A DNA stretch of 64,000 bases, taken from positions 33,604,001-33,668,000 of the forward strand of contig NC_087246.1 in assembly GCF_037042905.1 (NCBI RefSeq), given 5' to 3'. The translations under genes were made by a program, and so were the position numbers. Source of the stretch: Lytechinus pictus. Its lineage: Eukaryota. Shown here in pieces: positions 23,442 to 55,913 of the stretch (its first letter is position 1; each line of letters opens with the position of its first letter). The notes under the pieces are model-generated. The model did not search any database. It was given only the letters and a program-made list of their open reading frames with translations, and had not been told where the DNA came from.

Positions 23442-23706
23442 ATGTCTACTCAGGTCGTTCTGATGACCGGCTGTTCAGCAGGAATTGGTCTTGTTACAGC
23501 TAAACGTCTCGCTCTTGAACCAAATCAGCGATACGTCGTCATCGCTACCGTCATAGCGATGTCGGAGAAGACCGACTTGGTAGCTGCCGTAGGGGACGCT
23601 CTCAATAAGACAATTTTCATTGAGGAATTGGATGTCACAAAGGATTGTGACATCACAACCGTAGTGGATAAAATTCTCAAATCACATGGGCGTATTGACA
23701 TCCTCT
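23442..23706 (+). CDS. SDR gene 1 (RDH8/17beta-HSD1-like), coding exon 1
   Basis: ATG at 23442; MSTQVVLMTGCSAGIG carries the SDR TGxxxGxG motif, followed by LDVT and GRIDIL; phase-1 donor t|gtaagt at 23707; 265 nt. Confidence 0.93.
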
Positions 23707-23781
23707 GTAAGTGTTTTTGCTCTTTATATGAAACATCGTTAAGACAAGCAAGTTTATTTATGAGGTGTCAATTTGAACCAG

Positions 23782-23926
23782 TGGCCCGTTGCAGAAAGAG
23801 TTGCAATCAAACGCAACTCTAAAAATCATGCGTAACTTGATTTTCAACCAATCAACAGCGCGCATTTGGGACTTGCTATTGATTTTTTTACTTGTGTTTA
23901 AACGCAACTCTTTCTGCAACGGACCC
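23782..23926. mobile_element. MITE, same family as 7985 (CAG TSD), in intron 1 of SDR gene 1
   Basis: TIRs tggcccgttgcagaaagagttgc / gcaactctttctgcaacggaccc; cag on both flanks. Confidence 0.8.
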
Positions 23927-23943
23927 CAGACATCATATTAACT

Positions 23944-24125
23944 TTTATAACCAACCTGGTTATAAACCCAAGTTTTCAAGTGGACCATCATTCCTGATGA
24001 CGACCAGAACACGCTGGTCGGAACGTCGTTAACAGTTCTTTTCAGAGCTAACATACATTCAAGAAAGAATAAAAAACAGTCCTTTTCAGGACTACATACA
24101 TGGTGTTTACCGTAAAAAAAACCTC
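23944..24125 (+). mobile_element. Penelope-like terminal-repeat fragment with degenerate hammerhead motif
   Basis: Flanked by 13-bp direct repeat catcatattaact (23931-23943 and 24126-24138); contains CTGATGA-stem(cgaccag/ctggtcg)-GAAC-GTC and a downstream aataaa. Confidence 0.6.
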
Positions 24126-24811
24126 CATCATATTAACTATTGCAGTGTAGTAAGTAAATTCATTGTTAAGGTGTGAATGACTATTCTTTGATTTTATCAA
24201 TGTTTCGACTGAATTAGTAATTTATCACTTCACTTTCTGTACTATCAAAAAACTCAAATAATAACCTTTTTAAAGGATAGTTAGCTGCTAACATGCATAT
24301 CTGTCCAAAAAGGAAGGGCGACAAACCGTAACCCTGAGGTTTCTCACCAAAGAAAACAATTCAAAGGATGCCAACTCTTACGATTTCGTCGTTAGGCTAC
24401 CAAAAATGGCCCTAACACTTACCCTTATTTACTATCAGCACCGTAATCCTCCCTTTTTAAAGAATTAATAAAGATTTACATAATTTTTATGTTAAAACAT
24501 TGAATTTTTATTTCTAAACTTGTCAACTACTGCAAAATAAGGCTCAGATTGCACAGAGCATTTCGCAACTCAGAGCTCAGAGCCAGGCTATATGAACCCT
24601 GATAGCAAGGGCCGAGATATGCGCTATGTGTAGTTCATTTGATGTCATTTGCAAATGCCCCGAAAGCCTAATTTACAAAAACGGGCATTTCTGCATCATT
24701 TTTGTGACAAAAGACGTCATTGTCGGGTCTGTAAATCTGAAATGGTTTGAATGTTACTCTCATTTGGCATTCATCTGATTTTTTTTTCTTCTCTCTCTCA
24801 TATTCCTTCAG

Positions 24812-24991
24812 TGAATATTGCTGGTATCGCTCTTGGTGACATTGCCGAGCTTGTCACGCGTGACATGATCGAGAAGATCTTTAACGTTAATGTTTTTGGA
24901 CCAATGAGACTCACACAGGCAGTGCTACCTCAGATGAAGCAGAGAAAATCAGGGAAGATAATCTCCATGTCAAGTACAGCAGGAAGAAATG
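24812..24991 (+). CDS. SDR gene 1, coding exon 2
   Basis: Polypyrimidine tract and cag| acceptor; encodes (L)NIAG...FNVNVFG...GKIISMSSTAGRN; donor g|gtaagg; 180 nt. Confidence 0.93.
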
Positions 24992-25256
24992 GTAAGGATA
25001 AGCAGAGAATCGTCTTTCAAAGACTTGCGATTCAAATCAATCTCAAGTTGTGATTGATCTAAATTTGTGTAGTTTAGATGTATGAATGTTTAGATCGATT
25101 GCGATTTTATTTCTATATTTAAATGGTCTCCTTCGTTCGTATCAATTGAACTGATTAAAAATGAAATTAAAAAAAGCCAAAAGCATTTTGAAATGCATTT
25201 AATATAACAATAAATTGTCAGTGGCTTCGTGGGGTAATAGTTATTTTACAGTACAC

Positions 25257-25572
25257 TAGCGAACGTTCCCGAGAACACTTTATATAGAGTTTTCACCCCC
25301 ACGACGCACAACGGGTTCGGGAACATTATTGACAAATGCCCTTCGTGACAGTGAGGTCGAATCAAAACAGCGGATTTGTCCTGGACTCTGATGGACAAAC
25401 GACATATTAGCAATTTTTCGTCAGCTCCGAAACTGAATAAGGACAATCTGCTGTTCCGTTTCACCCATTTTCGGCTATGGCCTCGGGGTTGTTTATTGTG
25501 ATTTGACGGGCATTGTCAATACATTTACTGTGTTTTAGATTTCGTTCTGCGTAGAGTTGCGAAAGCTCGCTA
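25257..25572 (+). mobile_element. ~300-bp MITE family, copy 3 (intron 2 of SDR gene 1)
   Basis: Same core; right end gcgaaagctcgcta. Confidence 0.65.
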
Positions 25573-25627
25573 TTATCAATAGAGAACTGAATTCAGTCGA
25601 GTAGGCAAGTGCATGATAATGTTTTAA

Positions 25628-25785
25628 AAGGGGTACTCCGTGTTGAACAAGATCATATCTAAATATTTTTTTAGATATAATCTATTTAATAGAGTATTTT
25701 TCACTGAGCAAAATGCAGAAAATTTCCTCAAAATCAAATAACGAAGTAATTGAATTTTAAAATCAAGCAATATTGTCAAAACAGT

Positions 25786-25859
<74 letters not shown>

Positions 25860-26271
25860 ACGTCGTCTTGAACGCGTGGGTTGATGATGTCACATCCCCA
25901 CTTTCTTTTTCTTATGGTATTACATTAAATCATAGTTTTCAGTTATGCAAGAATGATATGTCTCTCTATTGATTAATTAAGTTGTAGTAATAAATTAAAT
26001 CAGTTTGTCAATCCAATATCGTCGTTCTTGGATTAAGGAATTTGAATAAACATAATTTCATGTAATAAAATGTAAAAGAACTAGTGGTGATATGGCATCA
26101 TCAGTGCTTATTGAATATTCATGAAGACATGTAAAGAATTGTTTCACCGAAAGTCAGATGTCATAACTCTGCTACTCAATGTCCGATTTTCGATCAAGTT
26201 TTTAGTGTTTTGTTTTGTCCGAGTTTTTTTTATCTGTTCAAATCATACTATTTTTGGCCTGGAGTACCCCA
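25628..26271. mobile_element. TTAA-flanked non-autonomous DNA transposon (Kolobok/piggyBac-like), intron 2 of SDR gene 1
   Basis: Termini ggggtactcc / ggagtacccc with TTAA flanks; homologous to 44574-45501; internal (TA)n(TG)n tract. Confidence 0.7.
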
Positions 26272-26469
26272 TTAAAGTACAAAGTCTTCTCATAGACACG
26301 GATTGCATTGGGGGTAACAACAATGGGGGACAGGCGGATTACGCGCCCCCATAAAAAGGGGAGGAGAGAAATAGTGTTGGAAAAGGAAACAGTATGAAGG
26401 AGCATAATTTAAGATTTACTTCCGGCCTATTAAATGGAAGTTTACATTGACCGTTTTCTTTTATATTAG

Positions 26470-26563
26470 GAGTACCCTACATGGACATGTATAGTTCAAC
26501 TAAATTCGCCTTGGAAGGTTTCTTCGAAGCTTTGGCTGTTAGTCTACGTGCGTTTAATATTAG
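26470..26563 (+). CDS. SDR gene 1, coding exon 3 (catalytic YxxxK)
   Basis: Too short for the ORF track; tag| acceptor; encodes (G)VPYMDMYSSTKFALEGFFEALAVSLRAFNI(R); donor ag|gtgag; 94 nt. Confidence 0.93.
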
Positions 26564-27421
26564 GTGAGATAACAGAATATTCAGCAGGGTAGTATGTTTG
26601 TGTATCCTCGACCGGTGAGTGGGTGGCGACATCATGCAACGCCTTTTTATCACAACACTATAGGGATTATCAAGCGATCGTTTGGGTCGATAACCAACTT
26701 CAAGTACATGACGTAGAACTCAGTTGCATAATATACTCCCCTAAGTACATACGCACTTTTACGTACTGGAAAATTGCATGTTGACCTTGGGTAACATAGG
26801 AGTACAATTTACCTATTAGAGCTACAAGCCTTGCTAACATAACATAAACAGCACCATCGTTCAGTTTCTATGCTAGTTTCTATGCTGAACAAAAAACATC
26901 AAAACGTCAATTTATTACATCGGAAGAAGCTGAATGGTTGATGAGCAGATATACGTGTGCATTGGATGTGCATGCATGCGCACTATGCCTGATGCAGAAA
27001 CTTGTACACGTTATGACGTCATCTAATTCAGGCCCACTATTCAACCTCTCGAATTCGAATATTTTGAAAACGATAAAAATACAACAACTTTACTTCAAAG
27101 AGGCAATGAGAGATGGATTAGGTCATCTTTCATTCTTTGTCTAATAGACATTCAATATATTATAGGCACTCCAATAAAGATCCAAGTTAACACAAATACC
27201 TGGCAATCCTAACTATAACCAGGGTAATTATCTTGAAAAGGAAAAGGTGTTCATCGTAACGCCATCACCTTATGCAGTTATGTGGTGGTATTGAAAGTCG
27301 AACAGTCTGTGTATTGTCATCCTGTGAATAGCACAGAGATATACTCTCAATGTAACTATAGTCCGGTTACACATCTTAATTGCACAAGCCATATAAGTTA
27401 TACTATCATCCTATTTTTCAG

Positions 27422-27767
27422 AATTTGTCTGGTCGAGCCTGGTCCAGTACGCACCGCTTTAAGGGATGGGGTTGTGGAGAATTTCCGCACCAGACACCAG
27501 GACAAGTCCATCGATGAAATAGACACCAAACAGCTCCAAAGACTACTAGATAATATATTAACAGAAAAGGGCTCCTACGATGCCTTGATGCCAGAGGATG
27601 TCGCCAAGGTCATTGTGACAAGGTGCGTGGAACCTGACGAGCCAGTGCTGAGACACCTACTTATTCCAGAGGATCTCAATGAGGTGGTCCGAATCGGGAT
27701 GGCCGACCTTACGGGAGAGAAGACCATCGAAAATGCACAGCAATCAATGATTAAAGTTCCTTCATGA
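27422..27767 (+). CDS. SDR gene 1, coding exon 4 (terminal)
   Basis: ttttcag| acceptor; encodes ICLVEPGPVRT... to TGA; the four exons total 885 nt (294 aa plus stop) with consistent phases. Confidence 0.92.
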
Positions 27768-31870: not shown

Positions 31871-32169
31871 TTTCTCCAAAGTGTTTCTGTAATAAGTGGC
31901 AAAATTGTGAAAAAAGTGTGAACCCCGATGGATTGACACTTTAGATCAATAGAACTTCTAAGTAAAAATACCACTCAGGATTAAGTTTGTTACTGTTTTG
32001 ATATTAAAAATCACAAAACATTTAGTATCAAAAGTACTACCTATGAATTAACCATCAATCAATGTGATAAGGGTAAATACACAAGAAGTGCAGAATCATT
32101 TGCTATTCGTTTTATGGACTGTATGGATTTTTTTTCATACATATTTTCATGTCATTCGTTTGCAGAGAA

Positions 32170-32464
32170 ATGTCTTCTCAAATTGTTCTGATGACCGGCT
32201 GTTCATCGGGTATCGGTCTTGCGACAGCTAAACGTCTCGCTCTGGTACCGAATCAGCGATACATCGTCATCGCTACCGTCATCGCGATATCCGAGAAGAC
32301 TGACTTGGTATCTGCCGTAGGGGACGCTCTCAATAAGACAATTTTTATTGAGGAATTGGACGTCACAAAGGATAATGACATCACGTCCGTAGTGGATAAA
32401 ACTCTTAAAGAGTACGGGAGAATCGATATACTCATGGACCTATAATAGGTCCATGATATACTTA
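32170..32464 (+). CDS. SDR gene 2, coding exon 1 (interrupted)
   Basis: MSSQIVLMTGCSSGIG...GRIDIL; acceptor tttgcag| ending at 32165 implies an upstream non-coding exon; donor a|gtaagt at 32465. Confidence 0.8.
32433..32455. mobile_element. 23-bp palindromic transposon remnant, putative P-superfamily excision footprint
   Basis: CATGGACCTATAATAGGTCCATG flanked by direct repeat ATATACT (32426-32432 and 32456-32462). Confidence 0.85.
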
Positions 32465-33385
32465 GTAAGTCATTGATGATGTATTCAAAGTGGTCTCAGG
32501 TGTCACGCGCGTAAAACATTCCCCATAGACTTGTGTATTAAAATGGCACTTAAGAAAAATTCATAAAAAATAAATGTGAAATTAGAGGGTCAAATGTTTA
32601 CTACCTTTGGATAGGATATATATCTGACATTCCATATCTGACCAGAGAAGGGTATCGTAGCCAGCTCATTTTAAAAATAAATCGCCATTTATGAAGATAA
32701 CTATGATGGGATCAAATTCATCAACTGAAACAGTAAAATAGCCCCAATTCTTCCACCAGTCAAAAAATAGTTCCAAATCATCGATATATCTTCCCAATTT
32801 GGGCAAAGGAAGTTCAGTAGTTACCATTTCTAGAATCAGTGTTAGATTTTGAATCATAATCACACACTTTTGCCAATCAGCAATATCAAATTGAAAAAAT
32901 TCGAATGGGTTGGGTCGAACGAGTATCTTTAGCCCTCCTGATGTAATTAGGCTCGTGGCATCCTCAGATGTCCGGTCCAGTATCAGTCATGACTGTCAGT
33001 GACGATTAAGAAACCGCCTTAACCGTTGTTGACCGCAATCATGCAGTAATACAGCCACAATAGACCTTAATACAACCACTGAAGACCGAAGCATACCGAA
33101 TAAGAACCGTTCTCAGTATTTCTGTCCAGAACGCTAAAGACGCCTAGATGGCTCACCGAATCGTCATCTTTCGACTCCGATCATTAATATAGACTAAAGC
33201 ATCCCTTATGCTCGTGAAAATTAATGAAAATTGGAATAACGATCCAACTGGTGTTACGACAATTTGTCCTCTGACGTCCATGTAAATGTTTCCAATTTCA
33301 TTTTGCTACTTTGATTTATGTTTCGGTGTAGAAAATATTGAAAGCGTATAGTCAGTATTAACTCTCACTTTGTTTCCCGACCTAG

Positions 33386-33565
33386 TAAATGTCGCTGGCA
33401 TCTGCTTCGTTGAGATTCCCGAGCGAGTCCCGCGTGACATGATAGAGAAGATCTTCAACGTCAACGTGTTTGGAGCGATGAGACTCACCCAGGCAGTTCT
33501 GTCTCAGATGAAAAAAAGAAAAGATGGAAAGATTGTAACCATAACAAGTTTGTCAGGAAGAATAG
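33386..33565 (+). CDS. SDR gene 2, coding exon 2
   Basis: ctag| acceptor; encodes NVAG...FNVNVFG...GKIVTITSLSGRI; donor g|gtaag; 180 nt. Confidence 0.85.
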
Positions 33566-34209
33566 GTAAGAGGGGCTTAGCAATAATGTCGTTCAGAATA
33601 ATCATTAAATTTTCCTAGTTTCTCTTGAAGCGAGCAAAACAACAAAATAGGTACTATCGAACTGAAATACATGTACTCGAAGAAGTTACCCCATGCAGTA
33701 ATAGCTTTGAAAACAGGCTACATAATATCATTACAAAAGCATGATGAAAACCTCTCTCCCCCCCCTCTCTCTCTCTCTCTCTCTCTATCGAATGCATATT
33801 TACCAGAGGTGCTATAAATCGCATGAATTATGATTATATTCAATTTGTTTATAGCGCATATTGTTGTGTACAACGTCTACTCTTAGCTTAATAGCAAATA
33901 TTCTTTGCACAATGGTACGACATTTCGCATTCGGTGAAAGAAAGAAGGAAACTCGTCAAATAGACGACTGTACCAGCTCTATGAAACACTCTTGTTCTAA
34001 GAGCCACAATTGGTAAAAAGTTAGTCCGACCAAGGTCCGACAGCCTAAATACGTACTGGCTTATACCCAGCAAGGTACCGACTATTACGCCAAATATGGA
34101 CCTGATGGCATTTGACTAAATATCATGCTAAACGCCATTTCTGCTTGCTCATTAATCAAAATATCCCAACAACCTACAATCACTAATCACGTCTTTTTTG
34201 TTACCATAG

Positions 34210-34303
34210 CAATGCCATACGCCGAGATGTACAGTTCGACTAAATTTGCCTTGGAAGGTTTCTTCGAGGTCCTGGCTGTTGGATTACGTGCGTTCAATAT
34301 TAG
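34210..34303 (+). CDS. SDR gene 2, coding exon 3
   Basis: catag| acceptor; encodes MPYAEMYSSTKFALEGFFEVLAVGLRAFNI; donor ag|gtgag; 94 nt. Confidence 0.85.
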
Positions 34304-34609
34304 GTGAGCTGACATTCAGTCATAAGGCATTCGTGGTTGTTAATGTTCTTTTAGGGTGTGACGTCTGGCAAGGGTTATTTCATATTAATCTTTCATCTCC
34401 AGAAATATCCAGAAACAATTAGCTCTCATATGATCATTCGATTATTCAGAGAAGTACCAGTGGACATTCATTTACAATTACATTTAGCTCATAGTAAAGG
34501 AGACGACTTTTCAAGGCACCTATGGTGTCTCAAACTATTTTAAAATTCATCGTGGAGAACCAATGTTTCTTAATATGCACGCAAAATTAAAGTTGTTTAA
34601 TATTTTCAG

Positions 34610-34937
34610 AATTTGTGTAGTGGAGCCTGGGCCAGTAGCAACCAGTTTATTGCACGGGCTCGTAAAGAATTTTGACGCCATACTCGATGACGAATCCCTC
34701 AACATCATCGACCGTCGACATGTTCAAGGATTCGTTGATAAATCGGCTATTGGAGAAGGACAATACAATGTCATGATGGCAGACGATGTCGCCAACTCCA
34801 TTGTGACAAGATGTATCGAGGCCGAGAAACCAGATCTCAGACACTTCCTTCCAGAACATCTCGGCGAGATGGTCCAGACAGGAATAGCCGACCTCACAGG
34901 AGAAAAGATTGTCGAAAATGGACAGTCTTTGATCTGA
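34610..34937 (+). CDS. SDR gene 2, coding exon 4
   Basis: ttttcag| acceptor; encodes ICVVEPGPVAT...ADLTGEKIVENGQSLI*, colinear with gene 1 exon 4. Confidence 0.85.
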
Positions 34938-35064
34938 ACTCTAAGGACATTATTGTCGTCTATGGGAGTGGCAGGGGAAGAGATTATGTTTAAGAGGACT
35001 CTAATCTTAGTGTTCTTCCAAGATCTGTAAGGCATCTTGTCACGTGGAATCACAATAAGCCTTG

Positions 35065-35845
35065 CCACTGTAGTAGGAATGTTAAGCACTTACTGTCCTT
35101 TGATATTATGAAGAAGCTGTACTTTTCAATGATTTTACCTTACATTGATTACTGTATTACATCTTGGGGAAGCAGTGCAAAAATACATTTAGATAAGATA
35201 CAAAAACTTCAAATTAAATATGCCAGAATGCTTTTGAAAAAAGATTATAATACATCACAAATTTCTTTGTTGCAGTCACTGAAGTGGCAATCAGTAGATC
35301 AGCGTATAAAATATCAGTATTGTGTTCTTGTATATAAAATAATGAATGATTTAGTTCCAAATTATTTAAAACCTTTAGTATGTAAACGGCCCGTGAAATA
35401 CAGGACACGGTATTCTTTACGATGCCCCCTTCAGCTTCCCAAAGCTAGAATTGAACATAAACGAAAATCTTTCGCATATGTCGGACCCAAATTATTTAAT
35501 GCACTTCCTTCAAATTTACAAGTTTGTACCTCCTTGTTAGTTTTTAAAAAATTATGCAAAGCCTTTCATACGAATTGATAAAGAGCGAAATGATATTCCA
35601 TTGATTTACAATGCTATGTATGTTTAAATTGTCACTTCCCACTCTATATTTTGGTGTTAATTGTTTCTGATGTTAGATATTTTGTATTTTGTATTTTTGA
35701 TGTTGTTTGTTGTTGTTGTTCATAGTTATCTTGATATGTATTTTAAACTGCAGGGCGCCTTTGTAAAGCAGTTTTAAGAACTGAACAGGCCTACCCTGCA
35801 GTATAAAATAAATAAAACAAAATAAATAAATAAATAAATAAATAT
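35065..35845 (+). mobile_element. 5'-truncated L2/CR1-group LINE just downstream of SDR gene 2
   Basis: ORF 35108-35578 (LYFSMILPYIDYCITSWG...SFAYVGPKLFNALP); 3' hairpin gcagggcg...ccctgc; (aaat)n tail. Confidence 0.88.
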
Positions 35846-54534: not shown

Positions 54535-55913
54535 GGGTGTCTGGAAAACGAAGACCGAAGACCGGGGACTCATATCACACTCGTGTGAAAGCGTTTGTAG
54601 TTCACGCCCAGTGTGTACAAAGCAGTGCAAAGTGTGTACAAAACACGCGCGCGGGTTAGAATGGACTTTGGACCTTGCCCCGACACATGTTCTCCCATTG
54701 ACAATGCACGGGTCCCCGGTCTTCGATCTTCGTTTTCCAAACCCGTTGTTGGGTGTCTGGAAAACGAAGACCGAAGACCGGGGATCGCATTCGTTTAGCT
54801 AAGATACCACTTATAAATGTCATTATGAAGGCCTCTATTATTCAGCTCAAATTCAAGAATATTCTGATCTAGAATACATTAATGTCACTAATTGGCTAAT
54901 AATGAAGTCATGTTAATTGCTTGTGTCAATAAATAGTATAGTTAGACCAGTTGAAGCGGGATAGGTCTCCCATTTTACACCACTATTCCACTGAGACAAG
55001 TAACAAACTCCAGTAATCAATCAGACCAGTTTCAAATTTCCAGTTAGAGGTTAACTCTAGACCAGTAATTTCAGACCAGTTTAATTCTTAACTGGTCCAG
55101 TAAAGTGAACTCGACCAGTTAGACCAGTATGCCGTTTTTCCATTTTCCAGAATTACATTCTGTGAACTGGTTTTTCCTTCTTAATTGGCTGACATTAATT
55201 TGCAATTTTACTACCATTGACATAACGCATGTCTCCGGTCTTCGGTCTTCGTTTTCCAAACCTGTTGTTGGGTGTCTGGAAAACGAAGACCGAAGACCGG
55301 GGATCGCGTCAATTCGTCTAGCTAAGATAGGCCTATAATATTCAGCACCAGTTTAAGAATATTCTGATCTTGGATACGTCATCAGCTATGATTGGCTGCG
55401 GATAAGTTATGGTTATTTGTGTGAATTTCGTTATCAGCTAGGGCATGATATTAAGGATAACGTACATATTTCACCCACGGAATTCAGCCATTGCAATTCT
55501 GAAAACTGTCATAAAACTGAAAACTTGCATACAATACACCTCATACTGCGCAATCACGTACAAGCAGACTCAACTCAACTGGCGTTTGCAACCGATTTAC
55601 TACCATTGACATTACGCATGTCCCCGGTCTTCGGTCTTCGTTTTCCAAACCTGTTGTTGGGTGTCTGGAAAACGAAGATCGAAGACCGGGGACCCGTGCA
55701 TTGTCAATGGGAGAACATGTGTCGGGGCAAGGTCCAAAGTCCATTCTAACCCGCGCACGTGTTTTGTACACACTTTGCACTGCTTTGTACCATGGACCTA
55801 TTACGAATAGGTCCATGTTTGTACACACTTCGGGCGTGAACTACAAACGCTTTCACACGAGTGTGATATGAGTCCCCGGTCTTCGGTCTTCGGTCTTCGT
55901 TTTCCAGACACCC
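54535..55913. mobile_element. MULE/foldback-type non-autonomous element
   Basis: ~250-bp near-perfect inverted arms starting GGGTGTCTGGAAAACGAAGACC; perfect 9-bp TSD GTATTTATA (54526-54534 and 55914-55922). Confidence 0.9.
55791..55817. mobile_element. 27-bp palindromic transposon remnant, same family
   Basis: CATGGACCTATT-ACG-AATAGGTCCATG flanked by TTTGTAC (55784-55790 and 55818-55824); empty site present in the opposite foldback arm near 54611-54625. Confidence 0.9.

What the first reader, a model, noticed from the sequence alone, without database searches (positions are those of the whole stretch)
32426..32470. SDR paralogue 2 is knocked out by one 30-bp transposon scar just before a splice donor
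Seen: gene 1 exon 1 ends R-I-D-I-L-t|gtaagt. Gene 2 reads aga atc gat ata ct[c atg gac cta TAA TAG gtc cat gat ata ct]t a|gtaagt. The insert keeps the frame but contains tandem stops after residue 91. All other exons, splice sites and catalytic motifs are undamaged. Inference: a very recent, possibly polymorphic null allele whose transcript should be a nonsense-mediated decay target. Gene predictors would probably mis-model it.
Basis: partly seen in the sequence, partly recalled or inferred. Interest (0 to 1): 0.75.

Follow-up and report, generated by a model that had tools for sequence, protein, structure and literature searches.

The report
Transposon excision scar breaks SDR gene
One of two neighbouring retinol-dehydrogenase-8-like genes of the painted sea urchin carries a 30-letter scar left by a departed P-type jumping gene, which puts two stop signals into its first exon. 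This is an ordinary, probably young null allele, but the public protein model for the gene reads as if the scar were not there.

Summary
Exon 1 of SDR gene 2 holds a 30-bp insert. It is a 7-bp target duplication (ATATACT, twice) around a 23-bp palindrome, with TAA TAG in frame after residue 91. The intact GTAAGT donor lies 19 nt further on.

The palindrome is the two ends of a ~842-bp non-autonomous transposon with 31-bp inverted repeats and 7-bp duplications. The genome holds at least 447 such scars (control 0) and about 160 elements with perfect ends.

The scars keep at most 18 nt of each end and join at 1-3 nt microhomologies. Their targets follow nTnnnAn. These traits match the P superfamily, but I found no transposase linked to the family.

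Gene 2 is otherwise intact (288 codons, all splice sites, catalytic motifs; dN/dS 0.28 against gene 1). Nine paralogues lack the insert. No in-phase cryptic donor could rescue it.

The genome is Lytechinus pictus. RefSeq XP_063951679.1 equals gene 2 translated with the 30 bp removed, so the annotation hides the lesion.

Polymorphism and nonsense-mediated decay stay untested, because public reads did not cover the site.

The scan had already found this scar family on other DNA of this genome (s1-294497). This is a new member of a known kind.

The parts
32170..32464 (+). Gene 2 (RDH8-like SDR, RefSeq XP_063951679.1 locus), exon 1 including the 30-bp scar
   Evidence: The ATG is at 32170. Pfam adh_short scores 8.3e-12 on the 91-aa open part. 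The exon model comes from paralogue alignment.
32426..32432 (+). Target-site duplication, copy 1 (ATATACT)
   Evidence: It is identical to 32456-32462.
32433..32455 (.). Excision scar: the first 10-11 nt and last 12-13 nt of the transposon's 31-bp inverted repeats, joined head to head (23-bp palindrome)
   Evidence: It matches the TIR consensus CATGGACCTATTA... on both arms. The same 23-mer occurs at 46 sites in the genome.
32443..32448 (+). In-frame TAA TAG (codons 92-93)
   Evidence: Translation.
32456..32462 (+). Target-site duplication, copy 2 (ATATACT)
32465..32470 (+). Intact exon-1 splice donor GTAAGT (phase 1)
   Evidence: All nine paralogues have it at the same place.
33386..33565 (+). 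Gene 2 exon 2 (NVAG, NVNVFG, catalytic Ser region)
   Evidence: adh_short 6.2e-12.
34210..34303 (+). Gene 2 exon 3 (YSSTK catalytic Tyr/Lys)
34610..34937 (+). Gene 2 exon 4 with stop TGA
23442..27767 (+). Gene 1 (XP_054765685.2, 294 aa), the intact paralogue that serves as the empty-site reference. Exons are 23442-23706, 24812-24991, 26470-26563 and 27422-27767.
   Evidence: 100% to P0025.
55784..55824 (.). Second scar of the same family: TSD TTTGTAC (55784-55790 and 55818-55824) around the 27-bp scar at 55791-55817
   Evidence: The other arm of the local foldback (54590-54680, minus strand) carries the empty site with a single TTTGTAC.

Best explanation
A non-autonomous cut-and-paste transposon inserted into codon 87-89 of exon 1 of the second RDH8-like SDR gene and duplicated ATATACT. 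The element is about 842 bp long, has 31-bp terminal inverted repeats beginning CATGGACCTATTACGAATGG, and makes 7-bp target duplications. It has the hallmarks of the P superfamily. It was later cut out again. The transposase cut the two strands about 17-18 nt apart inside each inverted repeat, so each flank kept a long single-stranded tail of transposon end. End-joining trimmed the tails and joined them at a 1-nt overlap. This left 23 nt of transposon ends plus the 7-bp duplication, 30 bp in all. The insert keeps the frame, but its centre (CTA TAA TAG) reads as two stops after residue 91. On this haplotype the gene can therefore make only the first third of the Rossmann fold, which makes it a null allele. 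Shown here: the scar's anatomy, its family, the stops, the intactness of the rest of the gene, and the absence of the insert in nine paralogues. Inferred: the P-type chemistry, the youth of the lesion, and loss of function.
For: The genome has 447 sites against 0 in the control. Of 26 sampled scars, 24 have exact 7-bp duplications. The parent element has a perfect 31-bp TIR and 7-bp TSD, and copies are about 95% alike. The perfect TIR occurs 319 times, mostly in pairs about 812 bp apart.

No scar arm exceeds 18 nt, junction overlaps are 1-3 nt, and one-sided breaks pile up right after TIR base 18. The target motif is nTnnnAn (92% T at position 2 and A at position 6), and C precedes 53% of perfect TIRs.

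The literature fits. The P element has 31-bp TIRs and an unusual 17-nt staggered cut (PMC7776569). 1360 and Galileo make 7-bp TSDs (PMC3698922), with consensus GTANTAC (PMC4168063). P-type transposase domains are present in the genome (41 PF21787 matches, open frames up to 959 aa).

Empty sites are seen in nine paralogues, and for the sister scar an empty site lies in the other foldback arm. On gene state, gene 2 has 288 intact codons and dN/dS 0.28 with dS 0.74 against gene 1. In-phase cryptic donors exist only within codons 9-21, and the next in-frame Met is at position 117.
Against: No autonomous copy was found. None of the PF21787 hits on C1-C5 lies near a perfect TIR listed, so the superfamily call rests on structure alone. 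No read covers the site, so heterozygosity or absence in other animals is unknown. The RefSeq model for this locus omits the 30 nt. That could mean the annotators had transcript or protein evidence lacking it. No expression was seen in the one RNA run laid, so nothing is known about the transcript.
Confidence: 0.82

Rival explanations
1. The 23-bp palindrome is not a repair scar but a minimal mobile unit, a 'micro-MITE' that itself transposed into the exon.
For: The identical 23-mer is found at 46 sites, and a few junction types recur many times.
Against: The recurrent types are the ones expected from annealing at the few self-complementary spots of one overhang (AAT/ATT, CG, TA). Arm lengths vary continuously from 7 to 18 nt and stop there. 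Some scars carry unrelated filler. In Drosophila, P elements need internal transposase-binding sites beyond the 31-bp repeats (PMC7776569), and 23 bp cannot hold them.
Confidence: 0.05
2. The 30 bp are an assembly or polishing artefact, and the real gene is intact.
For: RefSeq's protein lacks the ten codons. No independent read covers the site.
Against: The insert has the full anatomy of a biological event (exact 7-bp duplication plus both transposon ends), shared with 446 other sites. Assemblers do not invent such structures.
Confidence: 0.03
3. The gene still works because the 30 nt are removed from the RNA (a tiny intron), as the RefSeq model implies.
For: XP_063951679.1 equals the scar-free translation.
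Against: None of the 8 equivalent 30-nt gaps starts and ends with GT-AG, GC-AG or AT-AC. Thirty nt is at or below the size of spliceable animal introns (background knowledge). A 7-nt direct repeat around a perfect hairpin is the classic substrate for reverse-transcriptase skipping, and a 30-nt gap is the kind aligners call an intron (background knowledge). An annotation artefact is therefore more likely.
Confidence: 0.04
4. Gene 2 was already a dispensable, decaying copy, and the scar is incidental rather than the inactivating event.
For: The family has at least 10 paralogues in the genome. No Lytechinus variegatus orthologue of gene 2 appears among the best 120 family hits, although gene 1's orthologue does. 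No RNA reads fall on its exons in one run.
Against: dN/dS is 0.28 over 288 codons, and there is no other stop, frameshift or splice-site loss. Under substitutions alone, such intactness has a probability below 5% beyond about 0.08 substitutions per site of neutral drift.
Confidence: 0.08

Closest known systems
Imprecise-excision footprints of the Drosophila melanogaster P element
   Same: [quoted passage not shown] Both leave scars that keep both target-duplication copies plus up to about 17 nt of each inverted repeat, explained by a 17-nt staggered donor cut (PMC7776569). Such scars are a classic source of null alleles.
   Different: The duplication here is 7 bp, not 8. The arm ceiling looks like 18 nt rather than 17. 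The host is an echinoderm. The scars are natural and genome-wide (at least 447), not induced. No transposase is linked yet.
1360/Hoppel and Galileo (P superfamily, Drosophila)
   Same: Both make a 7-bp target duplication and prefer a palindromic target, GTANTAC in Galileo (PMC3698922; PMC4168063). Here positions 2 and 6 are T and A in 92% of cases, and G/C are favoured at positions 1 and 7.
   Different: There is no sequence similarity, and membership was not tested through a transposase. Galileo has very long foldback repeats, whereas this element has plain 31-bp repeats.
BuT5, a P-element-driven MITE of the Drosophila repleta group (PMC3698922)
   Same: It is a non-coding element of about 1 kb that depends on a P-type transposase encoded elsewhere.
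   Different: BuT5 has 3-bp TIRs and 8-9-bp duplications, and its master element is known. Here the master is unknown.
Retinol dehydrogenase 8 / 17-beta-hydroxysteroid dehydrogenase 1 clade of classical SDRs
   Same: Pfam adh_short matches, and TGxxxGxG, NxAG and S-YxxxK are present. Sea-urchin relatives are named RDH8-like, and a close full-length relative matches human 17-beta-HSD1 structures at 1e-34.
   Different: Gene 2 on this haplotype is interrupted after residue 91. The substrate is unknown. The family is expanded in sea urchins, with at least 10 copies here.

Membership tests
P superfamily of cut-and-paste DNA transposons (parent of the scar) | Terminal inverted repeats (31 bp in the P element) | tested here: met
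   A perfect 31-bp TIR on 842-bp copies, with 319 exact occurrences.
P superfamily of cut-and-paste DNA transposons (parent of the scar) | 7- or 8-bp target-site duplication | tested here: met
   Exact 7-bp duplications at 24 of 26 scars and at full copies.
P superfamily of cut-and-paste DNA transposons (parent of the scar) | Palindromic target preference of the GTANTAC kind | tested here: met
   The symmetrised profile is nTnnnAn at 92%. C precedes 169 of 319 perfect TIRs and A only 17. The scar studied here (ATATACT) fits at position 2 only.
P superfamily of cut-and-paste DNA transposons (parent of the scar) | Long (17-nt) staggered donor cut inside the TIR | tested here: met
   This is indirect. 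No scar arm exceeds 18 nt, breaks pile up after TIR base 18, and the longest scar is 18+18. The chemistry itself cannot be tested here.
P superfamily of cut-and-paste DNA transposons (parent of the scar) | Mobilised by a THAP/RNase-H-like P transposase | tested here: inconclusive
   PF21787 gives 41 matches with open frames up to 959 aa. None on C1-C5 lies near a listed perfect TIR.
Transposon excision footprint | Both duplication copies kept, with remnants of both element ends in inverted orientation between them | tested here: met
Transposon excision footprint | Homologous sequence with the unoccupied site | tested here: met
   Nine paralogues end exon 1 as GAT ATx xTx x|GT with no insert. 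For the sister scar, the empty site is in the other foldback arm.
Transposon excision footprint | Scar-free allele at the same locus in the species | tested here: inconclusive
   Reads do not cover the site. The older L. pictus model XP_054765676.1 (91% identical) reads RIDIIINVAG straight through, but it may be a divergent allele, another copy, or a model that skips a scar.
Classical SDR, RDH8/17-beta-HSD1-like | adh_short domain with TGxxxGxG, NxAG and Ser-Tyr-x-x-x-Lys | tested here: met
   The motifs are TGCSSGIG, NVAG and TS...YSSTK.
Classical SDR, RDH8/17-beta-HSD1-like | Uninterrupted reading frame | tested here: not met
   Gene 2 has TAA TAG after residue 91. Gene 1 meets this feature (294 aa).
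Nonsense-mediated-decay substrate | Stop more than about 50 nt upstream of a downstream exon junction, and reduced transcript level | not testable with these tools
   The geometry is met: the stops lie about 200 nt upstream of the exon 2-3 junction (from the sequence). There are no RNA reads on the gene in run X21, so decay cannot be judged.

The most novel reading that the evidence does not exclude
The P-type family that scarred this gene may still be jumping in the germ line of Lytechinus pictus, a sea urchin now bred as a genetic model. It would then be creating null alleles in coding exons, hopping locally, and being hidden by annotation. Supporting observations: three scars lie within 82 kb around this gene, three neighbour pairs lie within 10 kb against 0.24 expected, about 160 copies have perfect 31-bp ends, and the scars have perfect duplications. 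The scars would also give the first natural read-out of the strand-cut offset (about 18 nt) of a deuterostome P-type transposase. The element and its unknown transposase could become an endogenous tool, or a hazard, for urchin genetics.
Probability: 0.25. Interest if true: 0.55.

Novelty: new member of a known kind. Interest (0 to 1): 0.35.

Why it matters
The lesion itself is an ordinary loss-of-function allele in one member of a large, probably redundant enzyme family. Three things give it some value. First, it is a clean natural example of a coding gene knocked out by the departure of a transposon rather than its presence, in an animal where such events are rarely documented. Second, the public protein model for the locus reads as intact. 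Anyone using the annotation would miss that the reference haplotype is null, and the same may hold for other scars in exons. Third, the scar family (at least 447 sites) records how this transposase cuts and how the germ line repairs the break. The scan had already noted this on other DNA of the same genome.

Tried and rejected
1. Reads. The only holders found share at most 13% of sampled words. Three DNA runs from three studies hold contigs about 6-7% divergent from the window that stop short of 32362-32497. The RNA run X21 has reads only on intronic repeats. This gives no verdict on polymorphism, assembly correctness or splicing, and no calls were left to repeat it.

2. I checked whether the divergent exon-1 contig is really gene 1 or a C17 paralogue. 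Only 2 of 5 listed variants match gene 1, so it is a gene-2-like sequence, not a mis-laid paralogue.

3. Autonomous element. The three TIR ends without a partner within 1.5 kb turned out to be ordinary 842-bp copies with a mutated second TIR, one of them with an 866-bp insertion. Listing TIR places by their 5' neighbour base showed no co-location and was abandoned, because the C class exceeds the 100-row list.

4. Representatives search with gene 2 exon 4 gave only distant hits or fragments (at most 44% identity).

5. The look-up of encoding contigs for P0032 found nothing on record, so the exon structure of the RefSeq model could not be seen.

6. Cryptic-donor rescue is rejected. The in-phase GT/GC sites lie only at codons 9-21.

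7. A tiny-intron reading is rejected for lack of canonical ends.

8. A hAT, Mutator or Tc1 origin was considered and set aside. Those superfamilies leave a few bases or flank-derived palindromes, not 10-18 nt of each element end (background knowledge), and their duplications are 8, 9-10 or 2 bp.

9. I did not type the spliced proteins into any search. Full-length searches used an alignment of stored proteins plus exon references.

Full report
**What is there.** The window is AT-rich animal DNA (GC about 36%). Two paralogous four-exon genes for classical short-chain dehydrogenases lie 8.7 kb apart on the plus strand.
- Gene 1 has exons 23442-23706, 24812-24991, 26470-26563 and 27422-27767, and encodes 294 aa.
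- Gene 2 has exons 32170-32464, 33386-33565, 34210-34303 and 34610-34937.

All boundaries are AG|...|GT with conserved phases. Pfam adh_short matches exons 1 and 2 of both genes. The motifs TGCSSGIG, NVAG and S...YSSTK are present in gene 2.

**The lesion.** Exon 1 of gene 2 reads GAT ATA CT[C ATG GAC CTA TAA TAG GTC CAT GAT ATA CT]T A|GTAAGT. The 30 extra bases are ATATACT, then the 23-bp palindrome CATGGACCTAT-A-ATAGGTCCATG (32433-32455), then ATATACT again. The frame is kept, but codons 92 and 93 are TAA and TAG.

**Evidence that it is a transposon scar.**
- The pattern CATGGACCTAT-N(0-30)-ATAGGTCCATG occurs 447 times in the 812-Mb assembly and never in the reversed control.
- Of 15 fetched sites, 14 have an exact 7-bp duplication on either side and the fifteenth has 6 of 7. 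In a wider sample of 26 scars, 24 are exact.
- Extending the end sequence shows the parent, an element of about 842 bp with perfect 31-bp terminal inverted repeats (CATGGACCTATTACGAATGGACATTCAACGA) and 7-bp duplications. It has no long open frame, and copies are about 95% alike.
- The perfect 31-mer occurs 319 times, mostly as pairs about 812 bp apart, which is about 160 copies.
- The exact 23-mer of this finding occurs at 46 sites.
- A second scar of the family lies in the same window at 55791-55817 with duplication TTTGTAC. The other arm of the local foldback carries the empty site with a single TTTGTAC.
- For the gene itself, the empty state is shown by nine paralogues, all of which end exon 1 as GAT ATx xTx x|GTAAGT without any insert.

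**How the scar was made (inference).**
Arms range from 7 to 18 nt, and the two arms overlap by 1-3 nt at most junctions.
- The commonest 27-bp scar is what results if the 3' terminal AA(T) of one 17-18-nt tail pairs with the TT(A) at positions 10-12 of the other. The 28-bp and 24-bp types use the self-complementary CG and TA. The 23-bp type here joins arms of 10-11 and 12-13 nt at one shared base.
- One-sided breaks fall right after TIR base 18 in five of six cases.
- This is the signature of a long staggered donor cut. The only well-studied transposase known to make one is the P element's, which cuts 17 nt inside its 31-bp repeats (PMC7776569).
- Other family traits also fit the P superfamily. 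1360 and Galileo make 7-bp duplications (PMC3698922). Galileo's target consensus is GTANTAC (PMC4168063). Here positions 2 and 6 are T and A in 92% of cases, and C precedes 169 of 319 perfect repeats against 17 for A.
- P-type transposase domains exist in the genome, with 41 PF21787 matches and open frames up to 959 aa.
- The link is not closed. No transposase hit on C1-C5 lies near a listed perfect repeat. Membership in the P superfamily therefore rests on structure, not on the enzyme.

**Consequence for the gene.**
- With the 30 bp in place, translation stops after 91 residues, inside the cofactor-binding fold.
- The only in-phase GT/GC sites upstream of the stops are at codons 9-21. The next in-frame Met in the spliced message is at position 117. 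Neither cryptic splicing nor re-initiation could give an enzyme.
- None of the eight equivalent ways of removing 30 nt has GT-AG, GC-AG or AT-AC ends.
- The rest of the gene is clean. Set against gene 1, with the 30 bp left out for analysis only, it is 67% identical in protein, with dS 0.74, dN 0.21 and dN/dS 0.28.
- A simulation on its own coding sequence shows that, with substitutions alone, the chance of staying free of stops and splice-site hits falls below 5% at about 0.08 substitutions per site. The knock-out is therefore young relative to the duplication. 'Very recent' is not proven: the 37 scar and duplication bases being perfect gives a similar, weak bound.
- By geometry the stops lie about 200 nt upstream of the exon 2-3 junction, so the transcript would qualify for nonsense-mediated decay. 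Nothing here tests that.

**Species and annotation.** A profile of sea-urchin relatives plus the exon translations found two RefSeq proteins of Lytechinus pictus on a contig of 70,580,802 bp, which is exactly the length of this window's contig.
- XP_054765685.2 is 100% identical to gene 1.
- XP_063951679.1 (288 aa) is 100% identical to gene 2 translated with the 30 bp removed. How it does so could not be seen.
- An older L. pictus model, XP_054765676.1 (283 aa), is 91% identical to gene 2 and reads straight through the site (RIDIIINVAG). It suggests a scar-free version exists. However, its divergence equals that between L. pictus and L. variegatus for gene 1 (93%; old against new gene 1 is 99.7%). 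It may therefore be a deep allele or a copy absent from this assembly.

The family is named retinol dehydrogenase 8-like. A full-length Diadema relative matches human 17-beta-HSD1 structures at 1e-34.

**Reads.** The single run search found only weak holders. Three DNA runs from three studies and one RNA run were laid on 31900-35100.
- The DNA contigs over unique parts of the locus differ from the window by about 6-7%. None spans 32362-32497.
- The listed exon-1 variants are not those of gene 1.
- The RNA run shows reads only on intronic repeats.

Polymorphism, assembly correctness and transcript fate therefore remain open.

**Context from the scan.** Several first-reader notes say the same. 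My tests agree with it and add the parent element, the counts, the target motif and the arm-length ceiling. Those notes are not independent support.

**Verdict.** The event is a new instance of a well-known kind of mutation, in a redundant gene family, from a scar family the scan already knows. It is of moderate to low interest in itself. It is of some practical use as a warning about the annotation and as one more data point on an apparently recently active P-type transposon in a model sea urchin.

Noticed in passing
window 55784-55824 and 54590-54680: A second scar of the same family (27 bp, duplication TTTGTAC) sits in one arm of a local foldback. The other arm has the empty site.
   Followed up: yes
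G000 C2:33577865, 33636433, 33659791; C1:25580461/25584124; C1:39740931/39747815; C2:57951133/57954515: Scars are clustered. Three lie within 82 kb around this gene. Among the first 50 listed sites (about 102 Mb), three neighbour pairs lie within 10 kb against about 0.24 expected. This would fit the local hopping known for P elements, or a regional target preference.
   Followed up: partly
window 32498-32960 (intron 1 of gene 2) and 33826-34039: These are very high-copy repeats. Summed contig depth is 10^4-10^5 in all three DNA runs, and RNA reads fall on both strands in run X21. They were not classified.
   Followed up: no
and one search lists: About a fifth of the 27-bp scars read TTACAAAT or TTTGTAAT instead of TTACGAAT or TTCGTAAT, which is loss of the CpG in the retained arm. 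This could be used to date scars in methylated DNA.
   Followed up: no
G000 C4:4509025-4515442: Two perfect 31-bp repeats in inverted orientation lie 6.4 kb apart. This could be a longer, perhaps autonomous, copy or two half-degraded short ones.
   Followed up: no
window 31900-35100 against public runs X2, X4, X6: In three samples from three studies, every contig on unique parts of the locus is about 6-7% different from the assembly, and none is of the reference type. The older L. pictus protein model for a gene-2-like gene is only 91% identical. This could be a deep haplotype split, copy-number variation or a species-label problem.
   Followed up: partly
window 32298 -> 33547: DNA contigs in runs X4 and X6 join exon 1 to exon 2 at non-splice positions, skipping 1248 nt, with only 25 nt on the shorter side. 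This is probably chance or a paralogue.
   Followed up: no
L057:8286-9996: One copy of the 842-bp element carries an insertion of about 866 bp between its positions 755 and 758.
   Followed up: no
protein hits: Gene 1 has a 93%-identical orthologue annotated in Lytechinus variegatus (XP_041457397.1). No comparably close orthologue of gene 2 appears among the best 120 hits.
   Followed up: partly
   Followed up: no
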